In this document: positions 25,844 through 54,992 of the stretch, piece by piece | How the letters are laid out: every line of letters starts with the position of its first letter | Position numbering within the stretch: the stretch's first letter is position 1 | Sequence record: PQ898602.1 | Direction: 5' to 3' (one strand) | Length of the DNA stretch: 64,000 nt | The notes under the pieces: generated by a model | Databases searched by the model: none | Seen by the model: only the letters and a program-made list of their open reading frames with translations | What the model was told of the DNA's origin: nothing | Made by a program: the position numbers and the translations under genes

Positions 25844-27136
25844 ATGAAAAGTTTCAGCAAGTTCTTCTCGGAAGCCAGAGAAACCAATGCGTCTGCAGAA
25901 GCCAAGAAACTTGGTTTAAAAGGTGATGGTCACGGAGGATGGTATAATAAACAGGGAGAGTTTGTCGCCAAAACAGAAGGCGGTGAACTCGTATTTTATG
26001 GAAAAGATAACAAACCAGGTGAGAAGGATGAACCTCATTCCTCTACACCTACTGGTCAAGCACAGGCTGCTGGAACAGAAGTAGGTGAGAGACCACAAGT
26101 AAATCCACAAGCATCCAGAGAAACTCCTGCACAGACAAGAGCGAAAGGAAATAAAGTAGTTGTCAATCCTGACGAAGAGGAAGAAGTAGTTGATGCACCA
26201 GAAGGTGAAGAGACTGAACTTGCACCTGGTGTTGTTGTAGTCTTCGGTAGATTCAATCCACCTACAATCGGTCACAAGAAACTTCTTGATAAGGCTGCTG
26301 CAGTTGCAAGAAAGAAAGGATTTGAACTGAGAATTTATCCTTCTCGTTCTCAGGATGCGAAGAAGAATCCTCTGACACCTGATATGAAGATCTCATACAT
26401 GCGTCAGATGTTCCCTGATTACATCGACAATATTATTGACGACAAGGGATCGAAGACTATCTTCAATGTACTAACTGGTGCAAACGAAGAGGGTCATACA
26501 AACATGACCATTATGGTTGGTGGTGACAGACTTAGTGAGTTCCAAGGTCTTGCACATAAGTACAACGGAGACCTTTATCAGTATGATGATCTTCAGGTAA
26601 TCTCTGCAGGTGATAGAGATCCTGATTCTGATGATGTTTCTGGAATGTCTGCATCGAAACTGCGTCTTGCTGCAGCAGAAGGAGATTTCAAAAAGTTTGC
26701 GAAGGGTGTACCCGACACTCTGAAGAACATGGAGAAGATGGAACTCTACAATGTTATTCGTAGATCGATGAACATTAGTGAAGAGACTGAAGTATGGGAA
26801 GTTGCACCTAAACTTGATGAAGAGGGAATGCGTGATGCATATCTAGTTGATGGTGTTTTTGCAGTTGGTGATATGGTAGAGAACGTTAATACTGGTCTGG
26901 TTGGTGAAGTAACTCGTAGAGGAACGAACTACATCATTGCAGTAACTGAAGCGGGTATGATGTTCAAGTCTTGGTTGAGAGATATCACAGAATTTAAGTA
27001 CTATGAAGTCGGTACTGATGCACAGAGAATTCATGCACAATCGATTACACCAGGTCAAGAAGTAAAAAGTTATACTGGTGTAAAGGTTCCTTCGATTTAC
27101 GACAGATTTAAGGCGGCTCTGAAAAAGAATAAATAA
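25844..27136 (+). CDS. HIGH-family nucleotidyltransferase (cytidylyltransferase/NMNAT-like) with capsid-targeting-like N-terminus
   Basis: MKSFSKFFSE leader; FGRFNPPTIGH, KNPL, VGGDR, SGMSASKLR; TAAATA at 25805. Confidence 0.75.
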   Translation: MKSFSKFFSEARETNASAEAKKLGLKGDGHGGWYNKQGEFVAKTEGGELVFYGKDNKPGEKDEPHSSTPTGQAQAAGTEVGERPQVNPQASRETPAQTRAKGNKVVVNPDEEEEVVDAPEGEETELAPGVVVVFGRFNPPTIGHKKLLDKAAAVARKKGFELRIYPSRSQDAKKNPLTPDMKISYMRQMFPDYIDNIIDDKGSKTIFNVLTGANEEGHTNMTIMVGGDRLSEFQGLAHKYNGDLYQYDDLQVISAGDRDPDSDDVSGMSASKLRLAAAEGDFKKFAKGVPDTLKNMEKMELYNVIRRSMNISEETEVWEVAPKLDEEGMRDAYLVDGVFAVGDMVENVNTGLVGEVTRRGTNYIIAVTEAGMMFKSWLRDITEFKYYEVGTDAQRIHAQSITPGQEVKSYTGVKVPSIYDRFKAALKKNK

Positions 27137-27164: not shown

Positions 27165-29612
27165 ATGTCTAGTTGGGAAAAATTCTCGAGCGAAATTGTA
27201 GAGGGTAAGAAAAAGCCTGCGTTAGATCCTGTTGGAAAAGAGGATGCTGACATTAATAATGATGGCAAAGAGGATGAGACCGATTCGTATCTAAGAAATC
27301 GCAGAAAGATTAGATCCAGAATCATTAGGAAAGAAGACTATGAAAACATCGAAGAAAAAGCCGTCTCAAAAGCCCAACAAAGATTCTTCGGGATGGTTAG
27401 AGCGGCTCAAAAGGGGGAAATGGAAGACCCCTCGCCTGAGGTTTCCAAAGCTGCAGCCTCCATGTCCAAGTCCGACGTAAAGGACTTTGCGAAGACAAAA
27501 CACGATAAACTACCAGAGAAGAAAGAAACAAAGGAGGAAACTTCTCTGGTAGGTGATATTGTAGAAAATCTTAGAGCACAGAGACTTGCAAGACAGGCTC
27601 AGAGACAAATTGCCCAAGATAAACAGGCTAGAAGAAAAACTGCCCGTCAAGGTCAAGACATGATTAATGATTTGGTTAGAGGACCAAATCCATCTAGAGG
27701 TAAATCTAAGAGAGTTGAAGTAAAGGCACCTGCAAATGTAAAAGGTGGTGCTAAGAAATCTTCTGACGAACCAGATCTGGATACTGTATCAGGAAGAGCA
27801 GAAGAACGTCGTAGAGCCTCTAAAACATCTGCAGAACTGCGTAGACAGGAAGACAGAACTAAAAGATCTGGATTAGCTGCTCAACTCCGAGGAGAAAGAA
27901 CAAGAAAGAAAGAAGCAGAGACCGCTGCTGCAGAACGTCGTGCGGGTCGTGATGCTGCCGCTAGAGAGAATGAAGTAAAGAGAGCTAAAGAACTTAAGAG
28001 TGCTAAAATTGATGCTAAGTCTAAACAGGACTCTGCATTTATGGATACACTGAAGAAGGAGGTCGGTGATGGTCTTGATAGAGCTGGTTCTAGAGCTGCT
28101 GTCAAGAAAGATGATACTGGTGGACAGGCACTTAGGAATCTCGAAGTTGGTGGTGATTTAATTGGTGGTCTCGCAAAGGGTCTTGTTGGTGGTGCTATGG
28201 CCAAACGTAAGGCCAAAAAAGACAGATTGGATGATCTCAAGAAACGACGTGAGGTTGATAAGGCAGGTCGTGCTGCGGGCAAACGTTTTGATATGGGTAA
28301 AAAAGCTGAAGCGGATGCGAAAGCAGACATGGAAAAGGATAAGGATGATAACCTTAAAAAATTCCTAAACCAAAAACCACCCAAATCAGTCACTGATCCT
28401 TATAAGGATGGTAAAGGTCGTTCGGATGTTGTCAAAGCTGGTGGTATTGGTGCTCAAGGTTCTGTAAGATCCAAAGGTGGATCTATGGGTGCTGATGGCC
28501 CTAAGGGTACTGCAATTCCTGGAACTACACCTAAACCAGCATTAGCTCCATCTAAACCAAATACACCTCCTGTAAGTGGTGGCGCGAGAAACCTTCTTTC
28601 TCCTGCTCAAGCTATGTCCAAACCAAAGAAAAAATTCTCTTCTAGAGGAGAAGCACTCAGAAAGAATCCGAGTATGAGAGCTAAAGTAGCAAGAGAGTTG
28701 GGTATGGGTAGTGCTAAGAAAGAAAAACCAAAAGGTTTTAAAGAAGGATTCTCTAATTGGAGAGTTGAGCTCAACGAGGGTTTCTTCTTACAAGAGGTTG
28801 AGGATGTTGAGAACAATGGTCTCCACTCCAACATTAAAAAACTTGTTGACATCTCTAAGAAGAAAAACAAGATTGAGATCAATCCTGCACTAGGTGAAGG
28901 TGCGCTTCCTGTAAAACCCATCGTTGGTAGTTTTGCACAAGGTGAAGCGGGAAAAGGTGATTCCAACAGAACCATGGGTGATGTTGCGAAACGTAGAATC
29001 AGAAGAAAACTAGTTGACTGGGCATCCCAGAAAGCTGGTGAGAAAGCTGAGGATATCGTTAAGAACATCCTTGATAAAAAGAAGGAAGGTGAAGAAGTTA
29101 AAGAGGGGTGGTCGGACAAGTATAAAAAGTCTATTGATTGCGATAACCCCAAAGGGTTTAGTCAGAAAGCACATTGTGCAGGTAAGAAGAAAGAAGTCAA
29201 GGAAGCATTTAAAGATGGTGAGATGAAACCCCAACTCAAAAAGAAGAAGGGTAACATCCAAGTAGTTGATACTGGTAACACTTTAAAGAAGTCTGTTGAC
29301 AATCAGATCAATACCGATCCTGACCTAACCTTAATCAAGAAAAAGTTGAAAGAAGATTGGCAAAAAGTCAATCGCAAGGACAAGACAGATGGTCTGAGTC
29401 AGAAAGCAGTTGATGCGTATCGTAAAGAGAACCCAGGTTCAAAGTTACAAACTGCAGTAACTGAAAAGAAACCAACTGGTAAGAGAGCAGATCGTCGAAA
29501 GTCCTTCTGCCGTCGCATGAAGGGGATGAAAGCAAAACTGACATCCAAGAAAACTTCAAGAGATCCTGATTCCAGAATCAACAAAGCTCTTCGTCGTTGG
29601 AATTGCAACTGA
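27165..29612 (+). CDS. Large modular basic late protein; putative internal-head polyprotein
   Basis: TAAATA at 27130; modules bounded by [ILV]-x-E; includes Cys-containing C-terminal modules. Confidence 0.75.
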   Translation: MSSWEKFSSEIVEGKKKPALDPVGKEDADINNDGKEDETDSYLRNRRKIRSRIIRKEDYENIEEKAVSKAQQRFFGMVRAAQKGEMEDPSPEVSKAAASMSKSDVKDFAKTKHDKLPEKKETKEETSLVGDIVENLRAQRLARQAQRQIAQDKQARRKTARQGQDMINDLVRGPNPSRGKSKRVEVKAPANVKGGAKKSSDEPDLDTVSGRAEERRRASKTSAELRRQEDRTKRSGLAAQLRGERTRKKEAETAAAERRAGRDAAARENEVKRAKELKSAKIDAKSKQDSAFMDTLKKEVGDGLDRAGSRAAVKKDDTGGQALRNLEVGGDLIGGLAKGLVGGAMAKRKAKKDRLDDLKKRREVDKAGRAAGKRFDMGKKAEADAKADMEKDKDDNLKKFLNQKPPKSVTDPYKDGKGRSDVVKAGGIGAQGSVRSKGGSMGADGPKGTAIPGTTPKPALAPSKPNTPPVSGGARNLLSPAQAMSKPKKKFSSRGEALRKNPSMRAKVARELGMGSAKKEKPKGFKEGFSNWRVELNEGFFLQEVEDVENNGLHSNIKKLVDISKKKNKIEINPALGEGALPVKPIVGSFAQGEAGKGDSNRTMGDVAKRRIRRKLVDWASQKAGEKAEDIVKNILDKKKEGEEVKEGWSDKYKKSIDCDNPKGFSQKAHCAGKKKEVKEAFKDGEMKPQLKKKKGNIQVVDTGNTLKKSVDNQINTDPDLTLIKKKLKEDWQKVNRKDKTDGLSQKAVDAYRKENPGSKLQTAVTEKKPTGKRADRRKSFCRRMKGMKAKLTSKKTSRDPDSRINKALRRWNCN

Positions 29613-47453: not shown

Positions 47454-49718
47454 TTATCGGTCAGTGAACGTTATATTCAATCCATTAGTGAATGTAAGTC
47501 CATTTGGATTTTTAATCTGTAGGTTTGGTTTCTGTGGTTCAGATGGAGAACCCGTAGGTGCATCCCAAATGACTACGATATCTGTACCATAGCTATTTGT
47601 TCCATATGCATCTCTCCAGTTGTCATCAGTTGCAGACCAAGATGTTTGATCTCCGCCCATATAAAACTTCGCTGGATTCTGAGGACCACATTGATTTTTC
47701 AACCAAGTCTTAATATCACTCCACAACCATGCTCTATTGTATTGAAGTTTGGTAGTGATCCATCCTGCTGCAGTTGGACATGCAGAACTAGTACCACCAA
47801 AATCCACATCATATGCAGTAAGTGTTAGTCCAGTATATGTTTCTGGATGTTGATAAGTTAGAGCACTATTTCTTCCATCAGCTGTAAGGGTATCATCTGC
47901 TGCGGCATAACAATCAATACTAGAACCTCTATCAGAGTAATTAACAATTTTTTCTTTATAATCTGTTGGTCTGTCGCCAGAATTGCTGCCACCTGATCCA
48001 CTACTTTGAATTTGATCATCCAATGCGCCAATATTGATTGCAGGGTAAATGGTATTCGGACCTGTACCTGCTGCACCAATTGCTTGTGGCCAACCTCTTC
48101 TATTCAGTGTATTATAAGCAGTATAACCAAATTCTGTATGTGTACATTCTGTTAGTGCAACACCAGGAGTACCATTCCAGTAATTATTGTAATCAAGATC
48201 TCCTGGATTTACTTGAGTTTGGTTTGAATTGCCTGCAGCAACAACAAAAATAACACCTGCATCTACTGCTTCTTTTCCTGCAACAACATAAGAAGATTCT
48301 CTAGGGTGTTCACCCTTCATTCTTCCTGAGTCTCCATAATTACCCACATCAACGAAGAAGGCTGGTTCTGCTGTATAGCTTGTAGCACTAGTACCTCCAT
48401 CAATATCTGCTGGTCTGTACCAATAATAGTCACCTTCGCTAGAATGTGAACTGCTCCTGTATCCCCAGCTGTGACTTGATAAGGTAGGATTTCTATCTCC
48501 ATTTTGTTGTCTGCCGTTTGTTTCGGATACCCAACTATAATTTGGCTTATAAAGGTGGAATAATTTTAAGACATCAAAACCTGGACCTGCAATACCTGCA
48601 TCACTGCCGCCATACAGATTCATTACCCATTTGTTGCAGTTGTAAGCAACACCATAATTTTTTCCAAATACTTGACCTGCACATTGTGTTCCATGATTAG
48701 TTCCATTTGTTGCTTTCGCAGTATTAGAACCATTGGATGTAGCTCTTGTATATGCAGTACTAATTCCACTCACAGTACCAATAGTAGAGAATCCTACAGA
48801 TCTTTGTGATGAATCAGACCACCAAGATCTTGCTGCAGATTCTAGAGGAACTGTTGTTCCATCCCAACGAGTAGTTAGGAGTGATGGGTTTGCATTGAAG
48901 AAGTCTGGATCGATATAGTATGGACCATCGACAATAATATCCAAAACGCCACAACAATTTGCACCTTGAGTAGAAATACCTGCCCAAGTTAATGCGTTTC
49001 CAGTTTTCCAATTAGTAGGATTGGTATTGCCGCAATCAACAAACTCTGGGTGTGCAATCCAGAATCCATCATCGCAGACAACTGCATCGACTCCAGTACC
49101 ATCACCAAGTTGTTCTACATCTCTGACAAAGACATGGTGATCGGAATCACTTATTCCAGTATCTGTTGCATCCCAGGGATTTTCTCTCTGTGTGTGTCTA
49201 TAAATCTGATATCCAGTTCTATTATAATCAGTTGCTCCCGCACCAGTTTGTGGTGGTCGCGAGTCTGTGGGACCAGTATTCCAGGCACGATAATTAATTA
49301 CATTTTTTTCAAATCTTTTCTTATATTGAGGAGTTGCGTGTAGTTCACCTGGTTCTGGAGCATAAGTGCCAGGATAAGACTGATAATCAATGTGACAATA
49401 TTCTACTCTTGGATGATCTTTGAGTGCAGCTGCTTCCTCATCATCGAGGAGATAAGTTCCTCTCGTATCACTATGACTTTTTTCGTCTGCACACTCAATT
49501 GAAGATGGTGGGATATTATCTTCTAAAGTCCCATCTTGCATGAGAACTTCATGGACATGTTCCCAATCTTCTTTTGTATAACACCCAATGGTATATAATT
49601 TTTTCCCAGTTCCACCTGGGACAGAATCAAGACTGTCTCGGTCCAGTCTATTAGGTCCAGTCTCGTAAACTACCTGTTCTTCGGTAGGTTCAAGACCGGC
49701 TCTATCTGTCTCGATCAT
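47454..49718 (-). CDS. Subtilisin-like (S8) serine protease with propeptide
   Basis: VVCDDG (Asp), NHGTQCAG (His), VAAGNSN (oxyanion Asn), FGGTSSACP (Ser). Confidence 0.85.
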   Translation of the reverse strand: MIETDRAGLEPTEEQVVYETGPNRLDRDSLDSVPGGTGKKLYTIGCYTKEDWEHVHEVLMQDGTLEDNIPPSSIECADEKSHSDTRGTYLLDDEEAAALKDHPRVEYCHIDYQSYPGTYAPEPGELHATPQYKKRFEKNVINYRAWNTGPTDSRPPQTGAGATDYNRTGYQIYRHTQRENPWDATDTGISDSDHHVFVRDVEQLGDGTGVDAVVCDDGFWIAHPEFVDCGNTNPTNWKTGNALTWAGISTQGANCCGVLDIIVDGPYYIDPDFFNANPSLLTTRWDGTTVPLESAARSWWSDSSQRSVGFSTIGTVSGISTAYTRATSNGSNTAKATNGTNHGTQCAGQVFGKNYGVAYNCNKWVMNLYGGSDAGIAGPGFDVLKLFHLYKPNYSWVSETNGRQQNGDRNPTLSSHSWGYRSSSHSSEGDYYWYRPADIDGGTSATSYTAEPAFFVDVGNYGDSGRMKGEHPRESSYVVAGKEAVDAGVIFVVAAGNSNQTQVNPGDLDYNNYWNGTPGVALTECTHTEFGYTAYNTLNRRGWPQAIGAAGTGPNTIYPAINIGALDDQIQSSGSGGSNSGDRPTDYKEKIVNYSDRGSSIDCYAAADDTLTADGRNSALTYQHPETYTGLTLTAYDVDFGGTSSACPTAAGWITTKLQYNRAWLWSDIKTWLKNQCGPQNPAKFYMGGDQTSWSATDDNWRDAYGTNSYGTDIVVIWDAPTGSPSEPQKPNLQIKNPNGLTFTNGLNITFTDR

Positions 49719-52633
49719 CAGATTCCTCCTGTATAGTTAATGTTCCACTTAGATGTAATTACACCAGACTGACCCGATTCTGGGGTAAATCTGATATCAA
49801 CGTTACTTCCAACGACTGCTGCGTCGATAGACAAGATTTGATTTGGTGAGTACATAATTGCATACTCTTGGGAATATGCAGTGGTACCATCATGCATAAC
49901 GAGAAGTTTCTGAACTTGTCTTTGAGTTCCAAGTCCACAAGTGAAGGTATACTCTGCACTTGCATGGTCACTTAGTGCAAAACTATGTACGGTATATGCA
50001 ACACCTGCAGATGCAGTAGTTGTATTAACACCAGTTTGACCTTGTGCAGTGACTGTTACAACTCCTGCAGAAATGTCAGAACATGTGAGACCAATACCGA
50101 AGTTGATCGTTCCTGCAGTTCCTCTACTTACTCCACTATCAGAAACAGTTACACCTGCACCTGCTCCAGTAACACCAGTAAGTCCACCACCATCACCAGA
50201 GAATGAAGTCGCAGTTAGAACACCAGTGACAACTGCACCAGAAGTGTTTGCTTGGACTCTTACCGTATCTCCATCATCCTTAATACTTGTTCCTGCACCA
50301 ACACTGATTCCCGTAAGTGCGGAACCATCGATTGCAGGGAGAGCACCTGTTAAGTTTGCAGCAGGTAAACTTGTAAGGTTTGCGCCACTTCCATGGAAAG
50401 TACCAGAGAAGTTTGACGCATATAGGTAGTTAGTTCCTGGGTTGAATCTAAGTCCACCATTATCAACCATCAACTTGCTGTAGGAGTTACCTGCACCAGA
50501 GTTGTCCATCATGATGACATTGTAATTTACATTGTCATCAATAGATTCTTCAATTCTAATTCCACCATTGAAATTAGATGCAGTAACGATACCAGAACCA
50601 CCAACTTCAATACCACCTGCGGTCATGGTTACTCCGAACCCTGAACCATTTGCACCAACGTTAAGTTGACCTCTGAAGTTTGATGCGGTTCCGTTGCCGA
50701 ATACGTCAATACCATATTGGTAATAGACACCAGCTGTAGAAGTAAAGTAAACGAGGTTCTGATCGAAGTAAACGTATTGACCAGAAGGAGCTCTCAAGGA
50801 TAGAGTACCACTGGTACTCTCAACAACGTTTGTACTGAACTTGAGGTCCGCAACAGAAGCAACACCAGAAACTTGAATGTCACCTTCGACTGATAGATCT
50901 ACAGTTGGTCGGGTAGAACCAATACCAACTTTTCTTCCTGTGGTGAAGATACCTGCGAGTGCTCCATCAGAGACTGCCCAGGTTCCACCTGCACCAGGTA
51001 GAGATCCACTTGCACCTTGTAGACCCTGGAAACCTGCACCAGTTTCACCTTGAATACCTTGGAAACCATCTTGACCAAGAATGCCCTGTGTGCCTTGTAC
51101 GCCCTGCAGACCTTGTAGACCCTGAGTACCTTGTGCAGCAATATCAGATGCGTCTGCACCTTGAATACCTAAGATACCTTGAGTACCTTGCGCTGCTTGT
51201 GTACCTTGCAGACCCTGGAGGCCTTGGGTTCCTTGAACGCCCTGAAGTCCTTGCAAACCTTGAGTGCCTTGGACACCTTGGGTTCCTTGAACGCCTTGTG
51301 TTCCCTGAGCTCCCTGAATGCCCTGGAGTCCTTGTACGCCCTGAATGCCCTGGAGTCCTTGTACGCCCTGAATGCCCTGTGCTCCAGTTGTTCCCTGAAG
51401 ACCAGTTGCACCCTGTGGACCTTTGATCAGACCAACATCCGACCAAGTAGTTGCTCCAAATGTCCAGAGACGACCAGTGTCATCTGCGATAACACCATTA
51501 CCTGCAACAGGTGGATACCAAACGTAACCAGTATCGTCTGCGGTCAACGTTGTAGCACCAACACCTTGTGTATTGGATGGAATGTTACCGACAATGGTTA
51601 CCGAGGTTCCGTCTTCACCTTCAGTACCCTGTACGCCCTGAGGACCCTGTAGTCCCTGTACGCCTTGAACACCCTGAACGCCTTGGGTACCCTGGATACC
51701 TTGGGTTCCTTGCGCTGCCTGGGTGCCTTGGAGACCTTGTACGCCTTGAGTACCTTGGAATCCGTATGGTCCTTGAGTACCTTGGGATGCTTGTGTGCCC
51801 TGTAGACCTTGAACGCCTTGGAATCCGTATGGACCTTGAGTTCCATCTGTACCTTGAGAACCAGTTACAAGTTCTCCATTTGACCAGAACTGGGATGCAG
51901 TAATAATGCCAGTGGTATTAACGTAGGAATCAGTTGTAAGAGTCTTTGCTACATCTGCTAGGGAGGATACACCTGCGAGAGGAGTGTAGTATGCGAGTCT
52001 TGCTGCATCTACGATAGTTGTGATTCCAGTAACTGTTGCGATACCACCTGCAACTGTTACACCAAGATTTTCATTAAAGTCGATCTTGGAGAATTCACCG
52101 AGGATTACGTTATCATTTCTTAATTCGATACTTCCGATGCCAGCTGCGACTGTTCCACCGCCACTGACTACTGAAGTTGTTAGGGAAATAAGGACACGAC
52201 CTGCACCATCGGGATCACCTAATGTGAGTCCGTTACCGAAGTTGAGTTCTTTTGCAATACCTTTTCTAACCGAGTCGTCTAGAATCTCAACACCAGAGTT
52301 GGTTGCAACTACGTTTTCGAGTTGACTACCATCACCGAAGAATTGTGTTGCGGTAATGACACCTGTTGCGGTGATGTTCCTGACTTCGAGGTGTTCTGCG
52401 GTTGCTACTCCAGCAACGACTGCACCTGTTGTGTTGATAATCGGATTCCCAGTCAGGTTCTCTGCGACTGTTGAAATACCCGCACTATCTACATAACTTT
52501 CTAGATCATCTCCATCCCCAAAGGTATCGTAGAGTTCTTGAAAGTTACTATTAATTTTACCCATTGCAGAACGCAATGAATCACCAGTACCATCATTAGC
52601 GCTACTGCCTGTATTGATACCCAGTCTAGACAT
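49718..52633 (-). CDS. Tail-fibre-like protein with collagen-like G-X-Q repeats
   Basis: N-terminal NDGTGDSLR anchor; long QGxQG tracts; C-terminal LLVMHDGTTAY domain. Confidence 0.8.
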   Translation of the reverse strand: MSRLGINTGSSANDGTGDSLRSAMGKINSNFQELYDTFGDGDDLESYVDSAGISTVAENLTGNPIINTTGAVVAGVATAEHLEVRNITATGVITATQFFGDGSQLENVVATNSGVEILDDSVRKGIAKELNFGNGLTLGDPDGAGRVLISLTTSVVSGGGTVAAGIGSIELRNDNVILGEFSKIDFNENLGVTVAGGIATVTGITTIVDAARLAYYTPLAGVSSLADVAKTLTTDSYVNTTGIITASQFWSNGELVTGSQGTDGTQGPYGFQGVQGLQGTQASQGTQGPYGFQGTQGVQGLQGTQAAQGTQGIQGTQGVQGVQGVQGLQGPQGVQGTEGEDGTSVTIVGNIPSNTQGVGATTLTADDTGYVWYPPVAGNGVIADDTGRLWTFGATTWSDVGLIKGPQGATGLQGTTGAQGIQGVQGLQGIQGVQGLQGIQGAQGTQGVQGTQGVQGTQGLQGLQGVQGTQGLQGLQGTQAAQGTQGILGIQGADASDIAAQGTQGLQGLQGVQGTQGILGQDGFQGIQGETGAGFQGLQGASGSLPGAGGTWAVSDGALAGIFTTGRKVGIGSTRPTVDLSVEGDIQVSGVASVADLKFSTNVVESTSGTLSLRAPSGQYVYFDQNLVYFTSTAGVYYQYGIDVFGNGTASNFRGQLNVGANGSGFGVTMTAGGIEVGGSGIVTASNFNGGIRIEESIDDNVNYNVIMMDNSGAGNSYSKLMVDNGGLRFNPGTNYLYASNFSGTFHGSGANLTSLPAANLTGALPAIDGSALTGISVGAGTSIKDDGDTVRVQANTSGAVVTGVLTATSFSGDGGGLTGVTGAGAGVTVSDSGVSRGTAGTINFGIGLTCSDISAGVVTVTAQGQTGVNTTTASAGVAYTVHSFALSDHASAEYTFTCGLGTQRQVQKLLVMHDGTTAYSQEYAIMYSPNQILSIDAAVVGSNVDIRFTPESGQSGVITSKWNINYTGGI
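51020..51860 (-). repeat. Collagen-like 9-bp-period repeats incl. exact 27-bp tandem (51312-51379, about 2.5 copies)
   Basis: ccctgaatgccctggagtccttgtacg repeated. Confidence 0.9.
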
Positions 52634-52663: not shown

Positions 52664-52721
52664 TATTTATCGTTTCCCAGAATCGGTTATTTATTATATC
52701 AGATGTTGGCAATAATAAATA
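52664..52721. promoter_or_regulatory. Divergent late promoters
   Basis: Minus TAAATA at 52664-52669 and 52688-52693; plus TAAATA at 52716-52721. Confidence 0.65.
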
Positions 52722-52748: not shown

Positions 52749-54341
52749 ATGGATAAGTTCGACATCATTAAATCCTATTTACTAGACGAAGGTTTCGCGG
52801 AAACTGAGGAAGCTGCCATCGGTATGATGGTATCTATGAGTGAGTCTTGGAAAGAAGAAATTCTTGAAGGTTATAAGGGTAAGCATGGTCAGTCTGACAA
52901 AGAATATGCAGACTCCCGTTCCCAGGGTGGTAAGATGGTGTCTGGTGACTCCAAGATGAGTGGTGCAGAATACACCCATGGTCGTAGAGTTAAGGCAGCA
53001 AACCCTGGTATGCAACCTGATGTAGGTGGTAAGACCAAGCCCAAGTCTCAGGGTAAGATGGATGCTGGAACTCGCAATGAGTTGATGTATCGTAAGGCAA
53101 ATCTGAAGAAAGAAGAACTTGAGTTAGACGAGAATCGTCGCGCAGCTCGTTCTGCTGGTGGTTATAAGGACGACTCCAAGAAACAGACTGATCCTTCTAA
53201 GGATGGATTTACTGGTATCTCTGGTAGTATTGCAGATATCATGCGTCAGAACAAAGAGATTGAAGCAAAAAATAAGAAGATGAAGAAGGAAGAGGTTGAA
53301 GTAGAAGAAGGATATAAGGAGATTGATCAAGCCAAGAAGAACAGAATGTTCCGTCGTGCTGGTAATCTTTCCCGTGATGCAATCAGTACTCCCATTCCTC
53401 CAGAGAAACGCCAGGAAGCACACAAAAAGTCTGGTAAGATTGTCAAACAACTGAACAAGTTGAACCAGGAAGAAGTAGTTCTTGAGAAGAAGGAAGAAGT
53501 AGATCCAGAGAAAGCCAAAAAGGAAAAGATTAAGAAAACAATTTCTCATATGGGTAAAGGAAACCCACACTATGATGCCAAGAGTGCTGGAATCTCTCGT
53601 GTAAAAGATTTTAAGTTTACTCCTGTTAAAGAAGAAGTAGTTACTGAGAAGAAGAAAGACGATACATATCTTGAAACAGATATGAAGAAACGTCAGGCAA
53701 ACAACGAAAAGGCTCGTAAGGAAATGGAAAAGATCCCTGGTCAGAAGAACCCACACTTTGAAGAAGTACAACAAGTTGATGAGGCACTACCTCTATTAGC
53801 AGCAGTTCCTGCAATGCTCGGTAAAGCCGCTGCAGTTGGTGCTAAAGTTGGTGCAGTTGGTGCAAAAGCAGGCGCTGCCGCTGCAAAGGTAGGTGCGAAG
53901 TCGGGTATGAAGGCTAAACTGAAACTCAAGATGAAGGATATGGCAAAAGATGCCATTAAGAACAAAGCGCAAGACATGGCATCCAACGTTAAAGATAATG
54001 CCGCAAGTACAGCTAGTGATCTGAATCCACTCGATTCTCTAAAGAATTCTCACGAACCACAAGGTGAACAGATCAATGAGATCTCCGCAGAAACTGCACT
54101 CTCGGCTTCCAAGGCAAGAGACAAACAGGCAATGATGCTCAGAGGTCCAGAGAACACTGAGAAGAGAGCCGAACTGAGAGCAAAGGCATCTCAGAACTAT
54201 GACAGAGCAGTTAAGAAGCGTAAGGCAGGTTACGTCAAGAACACTGCATCTGCACAAGGTCCTGTTAGAAAAATGACTGCTGAGAGTATTAGTGACATCG
54301 CTTCTCTTCGTGCAGAGATGCTAAACGAGGAAAAAGAGTGA
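52749..54341 (+). CDS. Modular late protein; putative protease-processed internal-head polyprotein
   Basis: Eight EE-x(0-3)-[ILV]-x-E type boundaries separating basic modules. Confidence 0.75.
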   Translation: MDKFDIIKSYLLDEGFAETEEAAIGMMVSMSESWKEEILEGYKGKHGQSDKEYADSRSQGGKMVSGDSKMSGAEYTHGRRVKAANPGMQPDVGGKTKPKSQGKMDAGTRNELMYRKANLKKEELELDENRRAARSAGGYKDDSKKQTDPSKDGFTGISGSIADIMRQNKEIEAKNKKMKKEEVEVEEGYKEIDQAKKNRMFRRAGNLSRDAISTPIPPEKRQEAHKKSGKIVKQLNKLNQEEVVLEKKEEVDPEKAKKEKIKKTISHMGKGNPHYDAKSAGISRVKDFKFTPVKEEVVTEKKKDDTYLETDMKKRQANNEKARKEMEKIPGQKNPHFEEVQQVDEALPLLAAVPAMLGKAAAVGAKVGAVGAKAGAAAAKVGAKSGMKAKLKLKMKDMAKDAIKNKAQDMASNVKDNAASTASDLNPLDSLKNSHEPQGEQINEISAETALSASKARDKQAMMLRGPENTEKRAELRAKASQNYDRAVKKRKAGYVKNTASAQGPVRKMTAESISDIASLRAEMLNEEKE

Positions 54342-54475
54342 AGACGTTCAAACACTTCTCTGAAGGAACCAAGGAAGAGAACAAACAAAAAAGTTTGTTC
54401 GCGAGATATAAAGATCTCCAAAATCCTAAAGATCCAAAAACTACAGAAAAACTTCTCAAAAAAGGATCCGCTTGA
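54338..54475 (+). CDS. 45-aa basic protein with T4 capsid-targeting-like N-terminus (MKTFKHFSE)
   Basis: GTGA coupling to upstream stop; terminator follows. Confidence 0.55.
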   Translation: MKTFKHFSEGTKEENKQKSLFARYKDLQNPKDPKTTEKLLKKGSA

Positions 54476-54548: not shown

Positions 54549-54992
54549 ATGATAGATTATGAGAACCCTTGGATCTACAAGGGTCGTGCATTTTTATCAG
54601 AAGATATTGGAAATAATTACGGATTCGTATATAAGATTACGAATATCTTGAATGGTAGAGAGTATATTGGAAGAAAGTATTTCGTTCAGAAAAGAAAACC
54701 AAAAGGTGGTAAACGCCGAGTCACTTCTGAGTCTGATTGGAAGAAGTATTATGGGTCTTGCCCTGAGTTAAAAGACGACATTAAAAAGTTCGGAAAACAT
54801 AACTTTACCCGTGAAATTCTCAGTATACATAGTACACTGGGAAAAGTGAATTACGAGGAGACCCGTCAGTTGTTCGTACAGGGAGTCCTGACCGAATCGC
54901 TTGACAACGGGGTTCCGAGGTTCTACAATTCTAATGTTCTCGGCCGTTACTACAGGAAGGACTACTTTCATGGAACAAGATCTGATGAATGA
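54549..54992 (+). CDS. GIY-YIG family protein
   Basis: YGFVYKITN...YIGRK, W..YYGS, F.REIL..., YEE. Confidence 0.75.
   Translation: MIDYENPWIYKGRAFLSEDIGNNYGFVYKITNILNGREYIGRKYFVQKRKPKGGKRRVTSESDWKKYYGSCPELKDDIKKFGKHNFTREILSIHSTLGKVNYEETRQLFVQGVLTESLDNGVPRFYNSNVLGRYYRKDYFHGTRSDE

What the first reader, a model, noticed from the sequence alone, without database searches (positions are those of the whole stretch)
52749..54341. Candidate prohead-protease-processed cargo polyprotein: basic modules separated by EE-x-x-[ILV]-x-E sites
Seen: the protein reads as a leader plus about 7 unrelated basic modules, each ending in an acidic spacer: KEEILE|GYK, KEELELDE|NRR, KEEVEVEE|GYK, QEEVVLE|KKE, KEEVVTE|KKK, FEEVQQVDE|ALP, GEQINE|ISA, EMLNE|EKE. 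It sits behind a late promoter (TAAATA 52716). Established: T4 prohead protease gp21 cleaves internal head proteins after (I/L)-x-E, and internal proteins are injected with the DNA. Inference: this is a polyprotein chopped during head maturation into a cocktail of small basic peptides (DNA-condensing or injected anti-host/anti-defence effectors), with modules exchanged as cassettes. One module (ALPLLAAVPAMLGKAAAVGAKVGAVGAKAGAAAAKVGAK) looks like a cationic amphipathic membrane-active peptide.
Basis: partly seen in the sequence, partly recalled or inferred. Interest (0 to 1): 0.85.

Follow-up and report, generated by a model that had tools for sequence, protein, structure and literature searches.

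The report
Cassette-built candidate internal head polyprotein
A late gene of a marine cyanophage encodes a chain of short lysine-rich modules joined by acidic linkers that each end in the cutting motif of the phage's head-maturation protease. Wild relatives swap these modules exactly at the linkers, so it looks like a precursor of several small packaged head proteins, but no cutting has been observed.

Summary
The window is Synechococcus phage S-SCSM2R, and the ORF at 52749-54341 is SSCSM2R_205, annotated as hypothetical. Six acidic linkers of the form EE-[ILV]-...-E recur far more often than in shuffles, and each ends in [ILV]-x-E.

- Among 22 alleles with the same leader there are about 15 module architectures.
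- Two orthologous metagenomic loci are 89-95% identical in the flanks and lose collinearity only inside the gene, at linker DNA.
- Across 139 distinct contexts upstream of module M1, P1 is Glu in 138 and P3 is I/L/V/M in 126. This matches the T4 gp21 rule L/I-x-E.

The phage encodes a gp21 homologue. Its gp23 has an L-x-E|A site. The target carries the same late-promoter motif at the same spacing as portal and gp21.

Relatives that share modules are virion proteins by mass spectrometry in S-SM1. Neighbouring proteins carry T4-like capsid-targeting N-termini.

Cleavage, head location and injection are all untested. The target itself is not reported in the S-SCSM2R virion proteome text. No known family matches, and the AlphaFold model is mostly disordered.

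Verdict: a new variant of protease-processed internal head proteins, at about 50% confidence. The membrane-active peptide idea stays open.

The parts
52714..52721 (+). Late-promoter-like motif AATAAATA, 35 nt upstream of the start codon
   Evidence: the same NATAAATA motif lies -29 to -58 before portal, gp21, gp22, neck, baseplate and tailspike genes. It also precedes ORF174-176. It is absent before the replication genes. There are 12 copies on the + strand in 64 kb.
52749..54341 (+). Whole ORF SSCSM2R_205: 530 aa, 58.5 kDa, pI 9.4. Candidate multi-module precursor.
   Evidence: No Pfam, NCBIfam or PDB match. Only unknown-function PHROGs match, piecewise.
52749..52868 (+). Acidic leader, aa 1-40, ending in I-L-E. 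An earlier L-x-E ends at residue 14.
   Evidence: This is the only part with a usable model: pLDDT 75-78, three short helices. It is invariant in 14 alleles. It has an aromatic at position 4 and a hydrophobic at position 7, as in the T4 CTS description (PMC9026906). The same kind of helical module occurs internally in other family members, and alone in a 52-aa ORF after gp23.
52869..53132 (+). Module M1, aa 41-128, 9.6 kDa, pI 9.5. Linker aa 121-128 ends in L-D-E.
   Evidence: It is a discrete unit in 244 representative clusters, found at any position in proteins of 81-987 aa. Upstream junction logo: P1=E in 138/139 contexts and P3 in ILVM in 126/139. Matches phrog_1418.
53133..53309 (+). Module M2, aa 129-187, pI 9.0. 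Linker aa 180-187 ends in V-E-E.
   Evidence: In 31 distinct upstream contexts, all have hydrophobic-x-E before the module. It is invariant in close alleles.
53310..53486 (+). Module M3, aa 188-246, pI 10.0. Linker aa 240-246 ends in V-L-E.
   Evidence: It is 49% identical to the C-terminal module of S-SM1 SSM1_191, a virion protein by MS. It is near-identical in Syn9 gp185. Matches the tail of phrog_764.
53487..53648 (+). Module M4, aa 247-300, pI 9.4. Linker aa 294-300 ends in V-T-E.
   Evidence: It is absent from allele P0001. The deletion endpoints fall in a 29-nt repeat of linker-coding DNA.
53649..53783 (+). Module M5, aa 301-345, pI 6.8. Linker aa 337-345 ends in V-D-E.
   Evidence: It is found in other orders and in other proteins, including Syn9 gp186. 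Most upstream contexts have hydrophobic-x-E. Matches phrog_3326.
53784..54080 (+). Module M6, aa 346-444, pI 9.7. It has a hydrophobic start, then an Ala/Gly/Lys heptad repeat, and ends in I-N-E.
   Evidence: Lys lies at 359, 366, 373 and 380. The best 19-mer hydropathy is 1.59. Repeat number varies between alleles. pLDDT is 31-36. No PHROG match.
54081..54338 (+). Module M7, aa 445-530, pI 10.1, helical. A possible last site L-N-E lies three residues from the end.
   Evidence: It is nearly invariant in same-leader alleles. No match outside S-SCSM2R-like phages. No PHROG match.
54338..54475 (+). 45-aa ORF SSCSM2R_206 with a GTG start overlapping the target's stop. Candidate small internal protein.
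   Evidence: Its first nine residues are nearly the same as the N-terminus of T4 IPI fetched from NC_000866. It is also called in locus L010.
25844..27136 (+). NMNAT/cytidylyltransferase ORF175 (context): a virion enzyme family with a T4-type capsid-targeting-like N-terminus.
   Evidence: Searches show the pattern M-K-x-F-x-x-F-hydrophobic-x-E then A in five cyanophages. Orthologues were detected in virions (PMC3037559 Table S8; PMC9146016; PMC9602691).
27165..29612 (+). ORF176 (context): a second basic mosaic protein of the same superfamily, at the canonical locus downstream of the cytidylyltransferase.
   Evidence: One search shows a CTS-like start followed by I-V-E, shared modules, and further hydrophobic-x-E junctions. 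It matches 12 unknown-function PHROGs piecewise. It has a late-promoter motif at -37.

Best explanation
SSCSM2R_205 is a late-expressed precursor that enters the prohead core. The phage's gp21-type prohead protease then cuts it after the Glu of each hydrophobic-x-E junction. This releases a set of 5-10 kDa, mostly lysine-rich peptides in equal amounts, which play the role that the separate internal proteins IPI-III play in T4.

The linkers do two jobs. At the protein level they are the cutting sites. At the DNA level their similar coding sequence lets recombination add, drop and swap modules, so wild populations carry many module combinations.

Shown: the anatomy, the junction logo, the cassette exchange, the late promoter motif, the gp21 homologue, and virion presence of relatives.
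Inferred: entry into the head, cleavage, retention of fragments, and what they do (DNA charge neutralisation and/or delivery into the host).
For: 1. Six compound linkers occur, against fewer than 1 expected.
2. Junction logo over 139 distinct contexts: P1=E in 138 and P3 in ILVM in 126, against a background of 2.5% per residue. The other modules behave alike. The P3-P1 triplets vary widely, which points to selection on the peptide pattern rather than on one DNA repeat.
3. The motif is absent inside module bodies: 1 in 169 M1 bodies against about 48 expected.
4. There are about 15 architectures among 22 same-leader alleles. The orthologous loci L009 and L010 break collinearity only at linker DNA.
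5. The rule equals T4 gp21's L/I-x-E (PMC9026906). The phage's gp21 matches T4 gp21 structure 5JBL at E=3.5e-26. gp23 of this phage and of S-SZBM1 keeps L-x-E before a conserved Ala-Ala-Pro. gp22 carries the same EE-V-x-x-E runs.
6. Late-promoter motif at -35, as for portal and gp21.
7. S-SM1 proteins T4-GC1454 and T4-GC1455 and the cytidylyltransferase T4-GC190 are virion proteins by MS. T4-GC1454 shares M3 with the target. S-SZBM1_139 and _140 are likewise detected.
8. T4-like capsid-targeting N-termini occur in ORF175, ORF176 and ORF206. In P0182 such an N-terminus is fused directly to a single M1 module.
9. The protein is Lys-rich (82 K against 25 R). In T4, Lys of internal proteins contacts DNA (PMC3012670).
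Against: No cleavage product has been seen for any family member.

The S-SCSM2R virion study names 23 proteins. It does not name ORF205 in the text, and its tables are not held.

S-PM2 and Syn9 gel-based proteomes did not report the family.

In T4, multiply cut proteins are core proteins that leave the head, whereas cargo loses only an N-terminal propeptide.

The target's own N-terminus fits the T4 CTS description only loosely. Most family leaders are of other types.

One module type (LDPVG) lacks the hydrophobic P3 at its junction.

The contexts in the logo are related by descent, so the counts overstate independence.

The model predicts helices running through several linkers, at low confidence.
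Confidence: 0.5

Rival explanations
1. It is a sacrificial prohead-core accessory protein. It co-assembles with the scaffold, is cut at many sites by gp21 like T4 gp22, gp67 and gp68, and the pieces mostly leave the head before DNA packaging. On this reading it is assembly material, not cargo.
For: The T4 precedent is that many cuts go with core proteins that are removed. The linkers resemble the acidic EE-V-x-x-E runs of this phage's gp22. gp22 remnants are also picked up in virion MS (22 counts in S-SM1), so MS detection of relatives does not separate the two readings.
Against: T4 core proteins are acidic, whereas these module bodies are basic at pI 9-10, like the T4 IPs at pI 8.9-9.5. The gene lies outside the head gene cluster. 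Rapid cassette turnover is unusual for assembly scaffolds and typical of T-even internal proteins (PMC3012670).
Confidence: 0.17
2. It is an uncut, intrinsically disordered virion or late protein. Its alternating basic blocks and acidic linkers act as a blocky polyampholyte, for example in DNA or protein condensation. The linkers persist as short amphipathic segments and as recombination joints, not as protease sites.
For: The model is mostly disordered, with low-confidence helices that span the linkers. The hydrophobic positions at P6, P3 and P1' before M1 could also be read as a helical stripe. L3 and L4 share a long identical coding stretch that mediated a deletion.
Against: Only P3 and P1 are common to all junction types; the other hydrophobic positions shift. 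P1 is Glu in 99% of contexts and never Asp, which a charge or helix role would not require. Linkers are missing when a module is C-terminal. The motif is avoided inside modules.
Confidence: 0.2
3. It is a late non-virion protein. It acts in the infected cell, and its motif resemblance to gp21 sites is coincidental.
For: There is no direct MS evidence for ORF205. The gene sits among non-structural genes, a homing endonuclease and tRNAs.
Against: Relatives that share modules are detected in purified virions of two phages. The gene has a late-promoter motif like the structural genes. The superfamily carries CTS-like leaders.
Confidence: 0.08

Closest known systems
[quoted passage not shown]
   Same: They are small basic head-internal proteins made late. 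They are processed by gp21 after L/I-x-E and are highly variable between related phages behind a conserved leader (PMC9026906, PMC3012670). The predicted fragments here have similar size and pI. T4-like leaders occur on neighbouring genes.
   Different: There is no sequence homology. Here several cargo units are fused in one ORF with an internal site between each, instead of one gene and one leader per protein. The target's own leader is a 40-residue helical module, not the 10-residue T4 type. Packaging and ejection are untested.
T4 prohead core proteins gp22, gp67 and gp68
   Same: They are cut by gp21 at many sites, and some small fragments stay in the head (Table 1 of PMC9026906). The acidic EE-V-x-x-E runs in this phage's gp22 look like the target's linkers.
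   Different: Those proteins are acidic, conserved, essential and encoded in the head cluster. The target is basic between its linkers, hypervariable, and encoded elsewhere.
Inner-body and ejection proteins of phiKZ, 201phi2-1 and SPN3US
   Same: They are many head-internal proteins processed by a gp21-like protease after Glu at a three-residue motif. Some have several sites (PMC9026906).
   Different: The motif there is S/A-x-E. The proteins are large and not built from exchangeable short cassettes. There is no homology.
Cyanomyovirus virion proteins next to the cytidylyltransferase (S-SM1 T4-GC1454 and T4-GC1455, Syn9 gp185 and gp186, S-SZBM1_139)
   Same: They belong to the same mosaic superfamily. 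They share M3, M5 and Ala/Lys-rich segments, hydrophobic-x-E junctions and recurrent N-terminal leaders. They were detected in virions by MS.
   Different: They are annotated only as hypothetical or structural, and no processing or modular logic has been described for them. The target sits at another locus and has its own leader and its own M6-M7 end.

Membership tests
T4-type internal head proteins (IP/CTS system) | N-terminal capsid targeting sequence of about 10-19 residues, with targeting residues at positions 4 and 7 | tested here: inconclusive
   The target has Phe4 and Ile7, but its first L-x-E ends at residue 14 and the first 40 residues model as one helical unit. Clear T4-like N-termini are on ORF175, ORF176 and ORF206, not on the target.
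T4-type internal head proteins (IP/CTS system) | gp21 processing site L/I-x-E, with cleavage after Glu | tested here: met
   The motif is present at all six junctions and conserved across the family. Actual cleavage is not testable with these tools.
T4-type internal head proteins (IP/CTS system) | A gp21-family prohead protease in the same phage | tested here: met
   L005 41594-42244 matches T4 gp21 structure 5JBL at E=3.5e-26.
T4-type internal head proteins (IP/CTS system) | Mature products are small and basic | tested here: met
   Predicted fragments are 5.4-9.9 kDa. Six of seven module fragments have pI 9.0-10.1. T4 IPs have pI 8.9-9.5.
T4-type internal head proteins (IP/CTS system) | Present inside the mature head and ejected with the DNA | not testable with these tools
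   There is only indirect evidence: relatives are in whole-virion MS. ORF205 is not named in the S-SCSM2R virion text.
T4-type internal head proteins (IP/CTS system) | Sequence homology to IPI, IPII or IPIII | tested here: not met
   BLASTP against the three T4 proteins gave a best E of 0.62. No PHROG, Pfam or PDB link.
Prohead core/scaffold proteins (gp22, gp67, gp68 type) | Acidic protein encoded in the head gene cluster and conserved among relatives | tested here: not met
   The whole protein has pI 9.4. The gene lies about 58 kb from the head cluster. There are about 15 architectures in 22 alleles.
Prohead core/scaffold proteins (gp22, gp67, gp68 type) | Multiple gp21 sites along the chain | tested here: met
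   There are six to nine candidate sites.
Cyanomyovirus mosaic virion-protein superfamily (Syn9 gp185 / S-SM1 T4-GC1454 type) | Shares conserved short modules joined by hydrophobic-x-E junctions | tested here: met
   M3 is 49% identical to the module in SSM1_191. M3 and M5 are in Syn9 gp185 and gp186. There are 2163 hits with patchy coverage.

The most novel reading that the evidence does not exclude
Marine cyanomyoviruses carry a combinatorial effector polyprotein. Each cassette is a distinct small peptide that is packaged in the head. All are released in equal amounts by the prohead protease and delivered with the DNA, for example against host defences. The protease-site linkers double as recombination joints, so populations keep reshuffling the delivered set. 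This would be a diversity-generating layout for injected phage proteins that has not been described.
Probability: 0.2. Interest if true: 0.85.

Novelty: new variant of a known kind. Interest (0 to 1): 0.66.

Why it matters
Internal head proteins are known in detail only for T4 and a few giant phages. In T-even phages they are a fast-evolving set of counter-defence proteins. For marine cyanomyoviruses, which are among the most abundant viruses in the ocean, no internal-protein repertoire has been defined. These mosaic proteins are annotated as hypothetical.

If the reading holds, it would do three things:
- It would identify that repertoire and explain several 'unknown' virion proteins seen by mass spectrometry.
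- It would show a new layout: many cargo units in one precursor, with protease sites that also act as cassette joints.
- It would give a concrete hypervariable locus for studying phage-host arms races in picocyanobacteria.

It is directly testable with data of a kind that several groups already hold, namely virion LC-MS/MS runs.

Tried and rejected
- Pfam, NCBIfam, PDB sequence search and PHROGs gave no informative family.
- I first suspected membership of T4-GC15, a core cyanophage virion protein of similar length. I rejected it because T4-GC15 lies near gp5/gp26, while the S-SM2 match lies next to the cytidylyltransferase.
- The 'virion protein' and 'cytidyltransferase' labels on hits H3 and H7 are annotation transfer or fusion, not evidence.
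- The AlphaFold2 model was too weak (mean pLDDT 48, pTM 0.18) for a fold search, so I ran none.
- The S-SCSM2R and S-SCSM1 papers do not give the MS-detected ORF list in held text.
- Hambly 2001 and Doron 2016 are not held. I therefore could not cite an experimentally determined cyanophage gp23 N-terminus or a transcript class for the Syn9 relatives.
- The plain [ILV]-x-E count is not significant on its own.
- A scan for CTS-like starts over 164 kb of the genome found only ORF175 and ORF176 at true ATG gene starts, plus ORF206 with GTG.

I used neither in any query. The comparison reported here rests only on the T4 record NC_000866, whose accession is shown in PMC2993671 and which I fetched.
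Full report
Identity of the region. The window is bases 124001-188000 of Synechococcus phage S-SCSM2R (PQ898602.1), a 244-kb T4-like cyanomyovirus. The finding is its gene SSCSM2R_205, annotated as hypothetical. The ORF runs from the ATG at 52749 to the stop ending at 54341 (530 aa, 58.5 kDa, pI 9.4). It lies between a divergently transcribed collagen-like fibre gene and a 45-aa ORF, a SegE homing endonuclease and a lysozyme gene.

The observation. EE[ILV] occurs 7 times against 0.72 expected from composition-preserving shuffles. The compound form EE-x-x-[ILV]-x-E occurs 5 times against 0.04-0.22 expected, and no shuffle out of 5000 reached it. The bare tripeptide [ILV]-x-E is not enriched (10 against 7.4, P=0.18). 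What is unusual is the compound linker and its placement. Six linkers end in hydrophobic-x-Glu, after residues 40, 128, 187, 246, 300 and 345. Two further sites, after 444 and 527, fit the tripeptide only. The promoter remark is also right. AATAAATA lies at 52714-52721, 35 nt before the start. The same motif stands 36 nt before the portal and gp21 genes, before gp22, neck, baseplate and tailspike genes, and before ORF174-176. It stands before none of the replication genes checked.

The modules are real, exchangeable units. A protein search returned 2163 relatives with patchy coverage of the query. When close relatives are split at the linkers, whole modules are seen to be present, absent, replaced or reordered, always with the break at a linker. 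Among 22 proteins that share the target's leader I count about 15 different module orders; the leader, M2 and the M6-M7 end stay constant. Two of these alleles sit in metagenomic contigs at the same locus, with the same neighbours on both sides. Their DNA is 89-95% identical to the window across 13 kb and is collinear except inside this gene. In one of them, module M4 is missing between two copies of a 29-nt stretch of linker-coding DNA. Module M1 alone defines 244 representative clusters. It occurs at any position in proteins of 81 to 987 residues, and the match always begins at the second residue after the junction.

The junction logo. Taking every distinct 10-residue context upstream of M1 in 261 family proteins gives 139 contexts. 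The residue before the junction is Glu in 138 of them. The residue two before it is Ile, Leu, Val or Met in 126, while the position between them and the first residue of the module vary. The background frequency of that tripeptide in the same proteins is 2.5% per residue. Junctions before M2, M3, M5 and M6 behave the same way, including contexts with no acidic run at all. One module type (LDPVG) is an exception: it keeps a Glu but not the hydrophobic residue. Inside 169 distinct M1 bodies the tripeptide occurs once, against about 48 expected from shuffles. Linkers are absent where a module ends a protein. These counts are not phylogenetically independent. Even so, the variety of triplets and of upstream neighbours argues for selection on a peptide pattern rather than on one DNA repeat.

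Link to the prohead protease. The pattern is the published cleavage rule of T4 gp21: cleavage after Glu in L/I-x-E, with very few other determinants (PMC9026906). S-SCSM2R has the usual head cluster, and its gp21 matches the T4 gp21 structure 5JBL at E=3.5e-26. Its gp23 has L-G-E followed by Ala-Ala-Pro near residue 53, and S-SZBM1 gp23 has L-T-E before the same Ala-Ala-Pro. Its gp22 carries runs of EE-V-x-x-E like the target's linkers. I could not find an experimentally determined cyanophage cleavage site in the held literature.

Link to the virion. In most cyanomyoviruses, proteins of this mosaic kind lie just downstream of a cytidylyltransferase/NMNAT-like gene. In S-SM1 that enzyme (T4-GC190, 25 peptide counts) and the next two genes (T4-GC1454 with 10 counts, T4-GC1455 with 7) were detected in purified virions (PMC3037559 Table S8). 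T4-GC1454 (SSM1_191) ends in a module 49% identical to the target's M3 and has an Ala/Lys-rich segment like M6. Syn9 gp185 and gp186 carry M3 and M5. In S-SZBM1, the enzyme and the adjacent 457-aa protein were also detected (PMC9146016). NMNAT-like proteins recur in cyanophage virion proteomes (PMC9602691). For S-SCSM2R itself, 23 virion proteins are reported and ORF205 is not named. One detected protein of unknown function is left unnamed, and the tables are not held.

Targeting signals. I fetched the T4 internal-protein genes from NC_000866. The cyanophage cytidylyltransferases of five phages start with the same layout as T4 IPII and IPIII: Met-Lys, an aromatic at position 4, Phe at 7, a hydrophobic at 8, Glu at 10, then Ala. 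These are the positions the T4 literature assigns to targeting (4, 7) and processing (8, 10). The 45-aa ORF206, which overlaps the target's stop codon, starts almost exactly like T4 IPI. ORF176 and several family proteins have related starts, and in P0182 such a start is followed directly by a single M1 module. At least 35 of 261 family proteins share another recurrent 20-25-residue N-terminal leader that also ends in hydrophobic-x-Glu. The target's own N-terminus has Phe4 and Ile7, but its first L-x-E ends at residue 14. Its first 40 residues form the only confidently modelled part of the protein, a small three-helix unit. The same kind of unit occurs internally in other members, and it occurs alone in a 52-aa ORF just after gp23.

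Structure and families. There is no Pfam, NCBIfam or PDB match. PHROG matches are piecewise and of unknown function. The AlphaFold2 model has mean pLDDT 48 and pTM 0.18, so beyond the leader the chain is best described as disordered or as isolated helices. I therefore ran no fold search.

Most likely mechanism. The gene is expressed late. The precursor joins the prohead core, and gp21 cuts after each junction Glu. Seven fragments of 5-10 kDa result, six of them with pI 9-10, each keeping a short acidic tail. They would resemble T4 IPs in size and charge. T4 work shows Lys of internal proteins contacting DNA, and shows IPs as a diverse counter-defence set behind a conserved leader (PMC3012670). 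The linker coding sequence provides the homology for cassette exchange. The anatomy, logo, cassette exchange, promoter motif, protease homologue and virion presence of relatives are shown. Entry into the head, cleavage, retention and function are inferred. I put this at about 0.5.

Rivals.
- A discarded core protein. In T4, proteins cut many times are core components that leave the head. However, those are acidic, conserved and encoded in the head cluster.
- An uncut blocky polyampholyte whose linkers are structural and recombinogenic. The near-absolute Glu at P1, the absence of linkers at protein ends and the avoidance of the motif inside modules speak against this.
- A non-virion late protein, which is the least likely given the MS data on relatives.

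The M6 segment has Lys at exact heptad spacing (359, 366, 373, 380) in an Ala/Gly/Val background, borderline hydropathy and a variable repeat number. It could be membrane-active or simply an Ala/Lys-rich DNA-binding stretch, and nothing here decides between these.

Novelty and verdict. The kind of system is known: protease-processed internal head proteins with conserved processing signals and hypervariable cargo. Stringing many cargo units into one ORF, with a site at each joint and cassette turnover at those joints, is not described in the literature I could search. I rate it a new variant of a known kind, interest 0.66. It is directly testable by a semi-specific re-search of virion MS data.

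Declaration. Before any tool had shown it, I wrote from memory, in my private reasoning, the first ten residues of the T4 IPII/IPIII propeptide, and later its first four letters again. I used them in no query. The T4 comparison rests only on the record fetched.

Noticed in passing
window 54338-54475 (+): A 45-aa ORF (SSCSM2R_206) with a GTG start overlapping the target's stop codon. Its first nine residues are almost identical to the N-terminus of T4 internal protein I. It may be a stand-alone small internal protein that is translationally coupled to the target.
   Followed up: partly
window 25844-27136 (+): The NMNAT/cytidylyltransferase ORF175 begins with a T4 IPII/IPIII-type capsid-targeting pattern followed by Ala. 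The pattern is conserved in S-SM1, Syn9, S-SM2, RN05-S and (one residue shorter) S-SZBM1. The enzyme is a recurrent virion protein by MS, so it is probably packaged in the head through a CTS-like propeptide.
   Followed up: partly
window 27165-29612 (+): ORF176 is a second basic mosaic protein (815 aa). It has a CTS-like start, an Asp-rich LDPVG...DxDxDG-like module also seen in many family members, and further hydrophobic-x-E junctions. It matches 12 different unknown-function PHROGs piecewise.
   Followed up: partly
L005 44957-45115 (record 118957-119115, outside the window): The 52-aa ORF directly after gp23 consists of little more than the same helical module type as the target's leader, and it ends in I-S-E.
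   Followed up: no
window 54549-54992 (+): A SegE-type GIY-YIG homing endonuclease gene lies right beside the hypervariable gene and carries its own late-promoter-like motif. Endonuclease-induced breaks could add to recombination at this locus.
   Followed up: no
window 47454-52633 (-): A 971-aa protein with long collagen-like G-x-Q/G-x-y repeats (annotated FhaB) is followed by an S8 peptidase-domain protein. Both are transcribed divergently from the target. The repeat region shows internal DNA repeats in comparisons with related loci.
   Followed up: no
window 53784-53950 (+), within the target: The Ala/Gly/Lys segment is a true heptad repeat with Lys every seventh residue. Its copy number differs between alleles, from about one to six units.
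   Followed up: partly
family proteins P0022-P0256: A recurrent 20-25-residue N-terminal leader, different from the T4-type CTS and ending in hydrophobic-x-Glu, heads at least 35 of 261 family proteins. It is a candidate cyanophage-specific targeting propeptide.
   Followed up: partly
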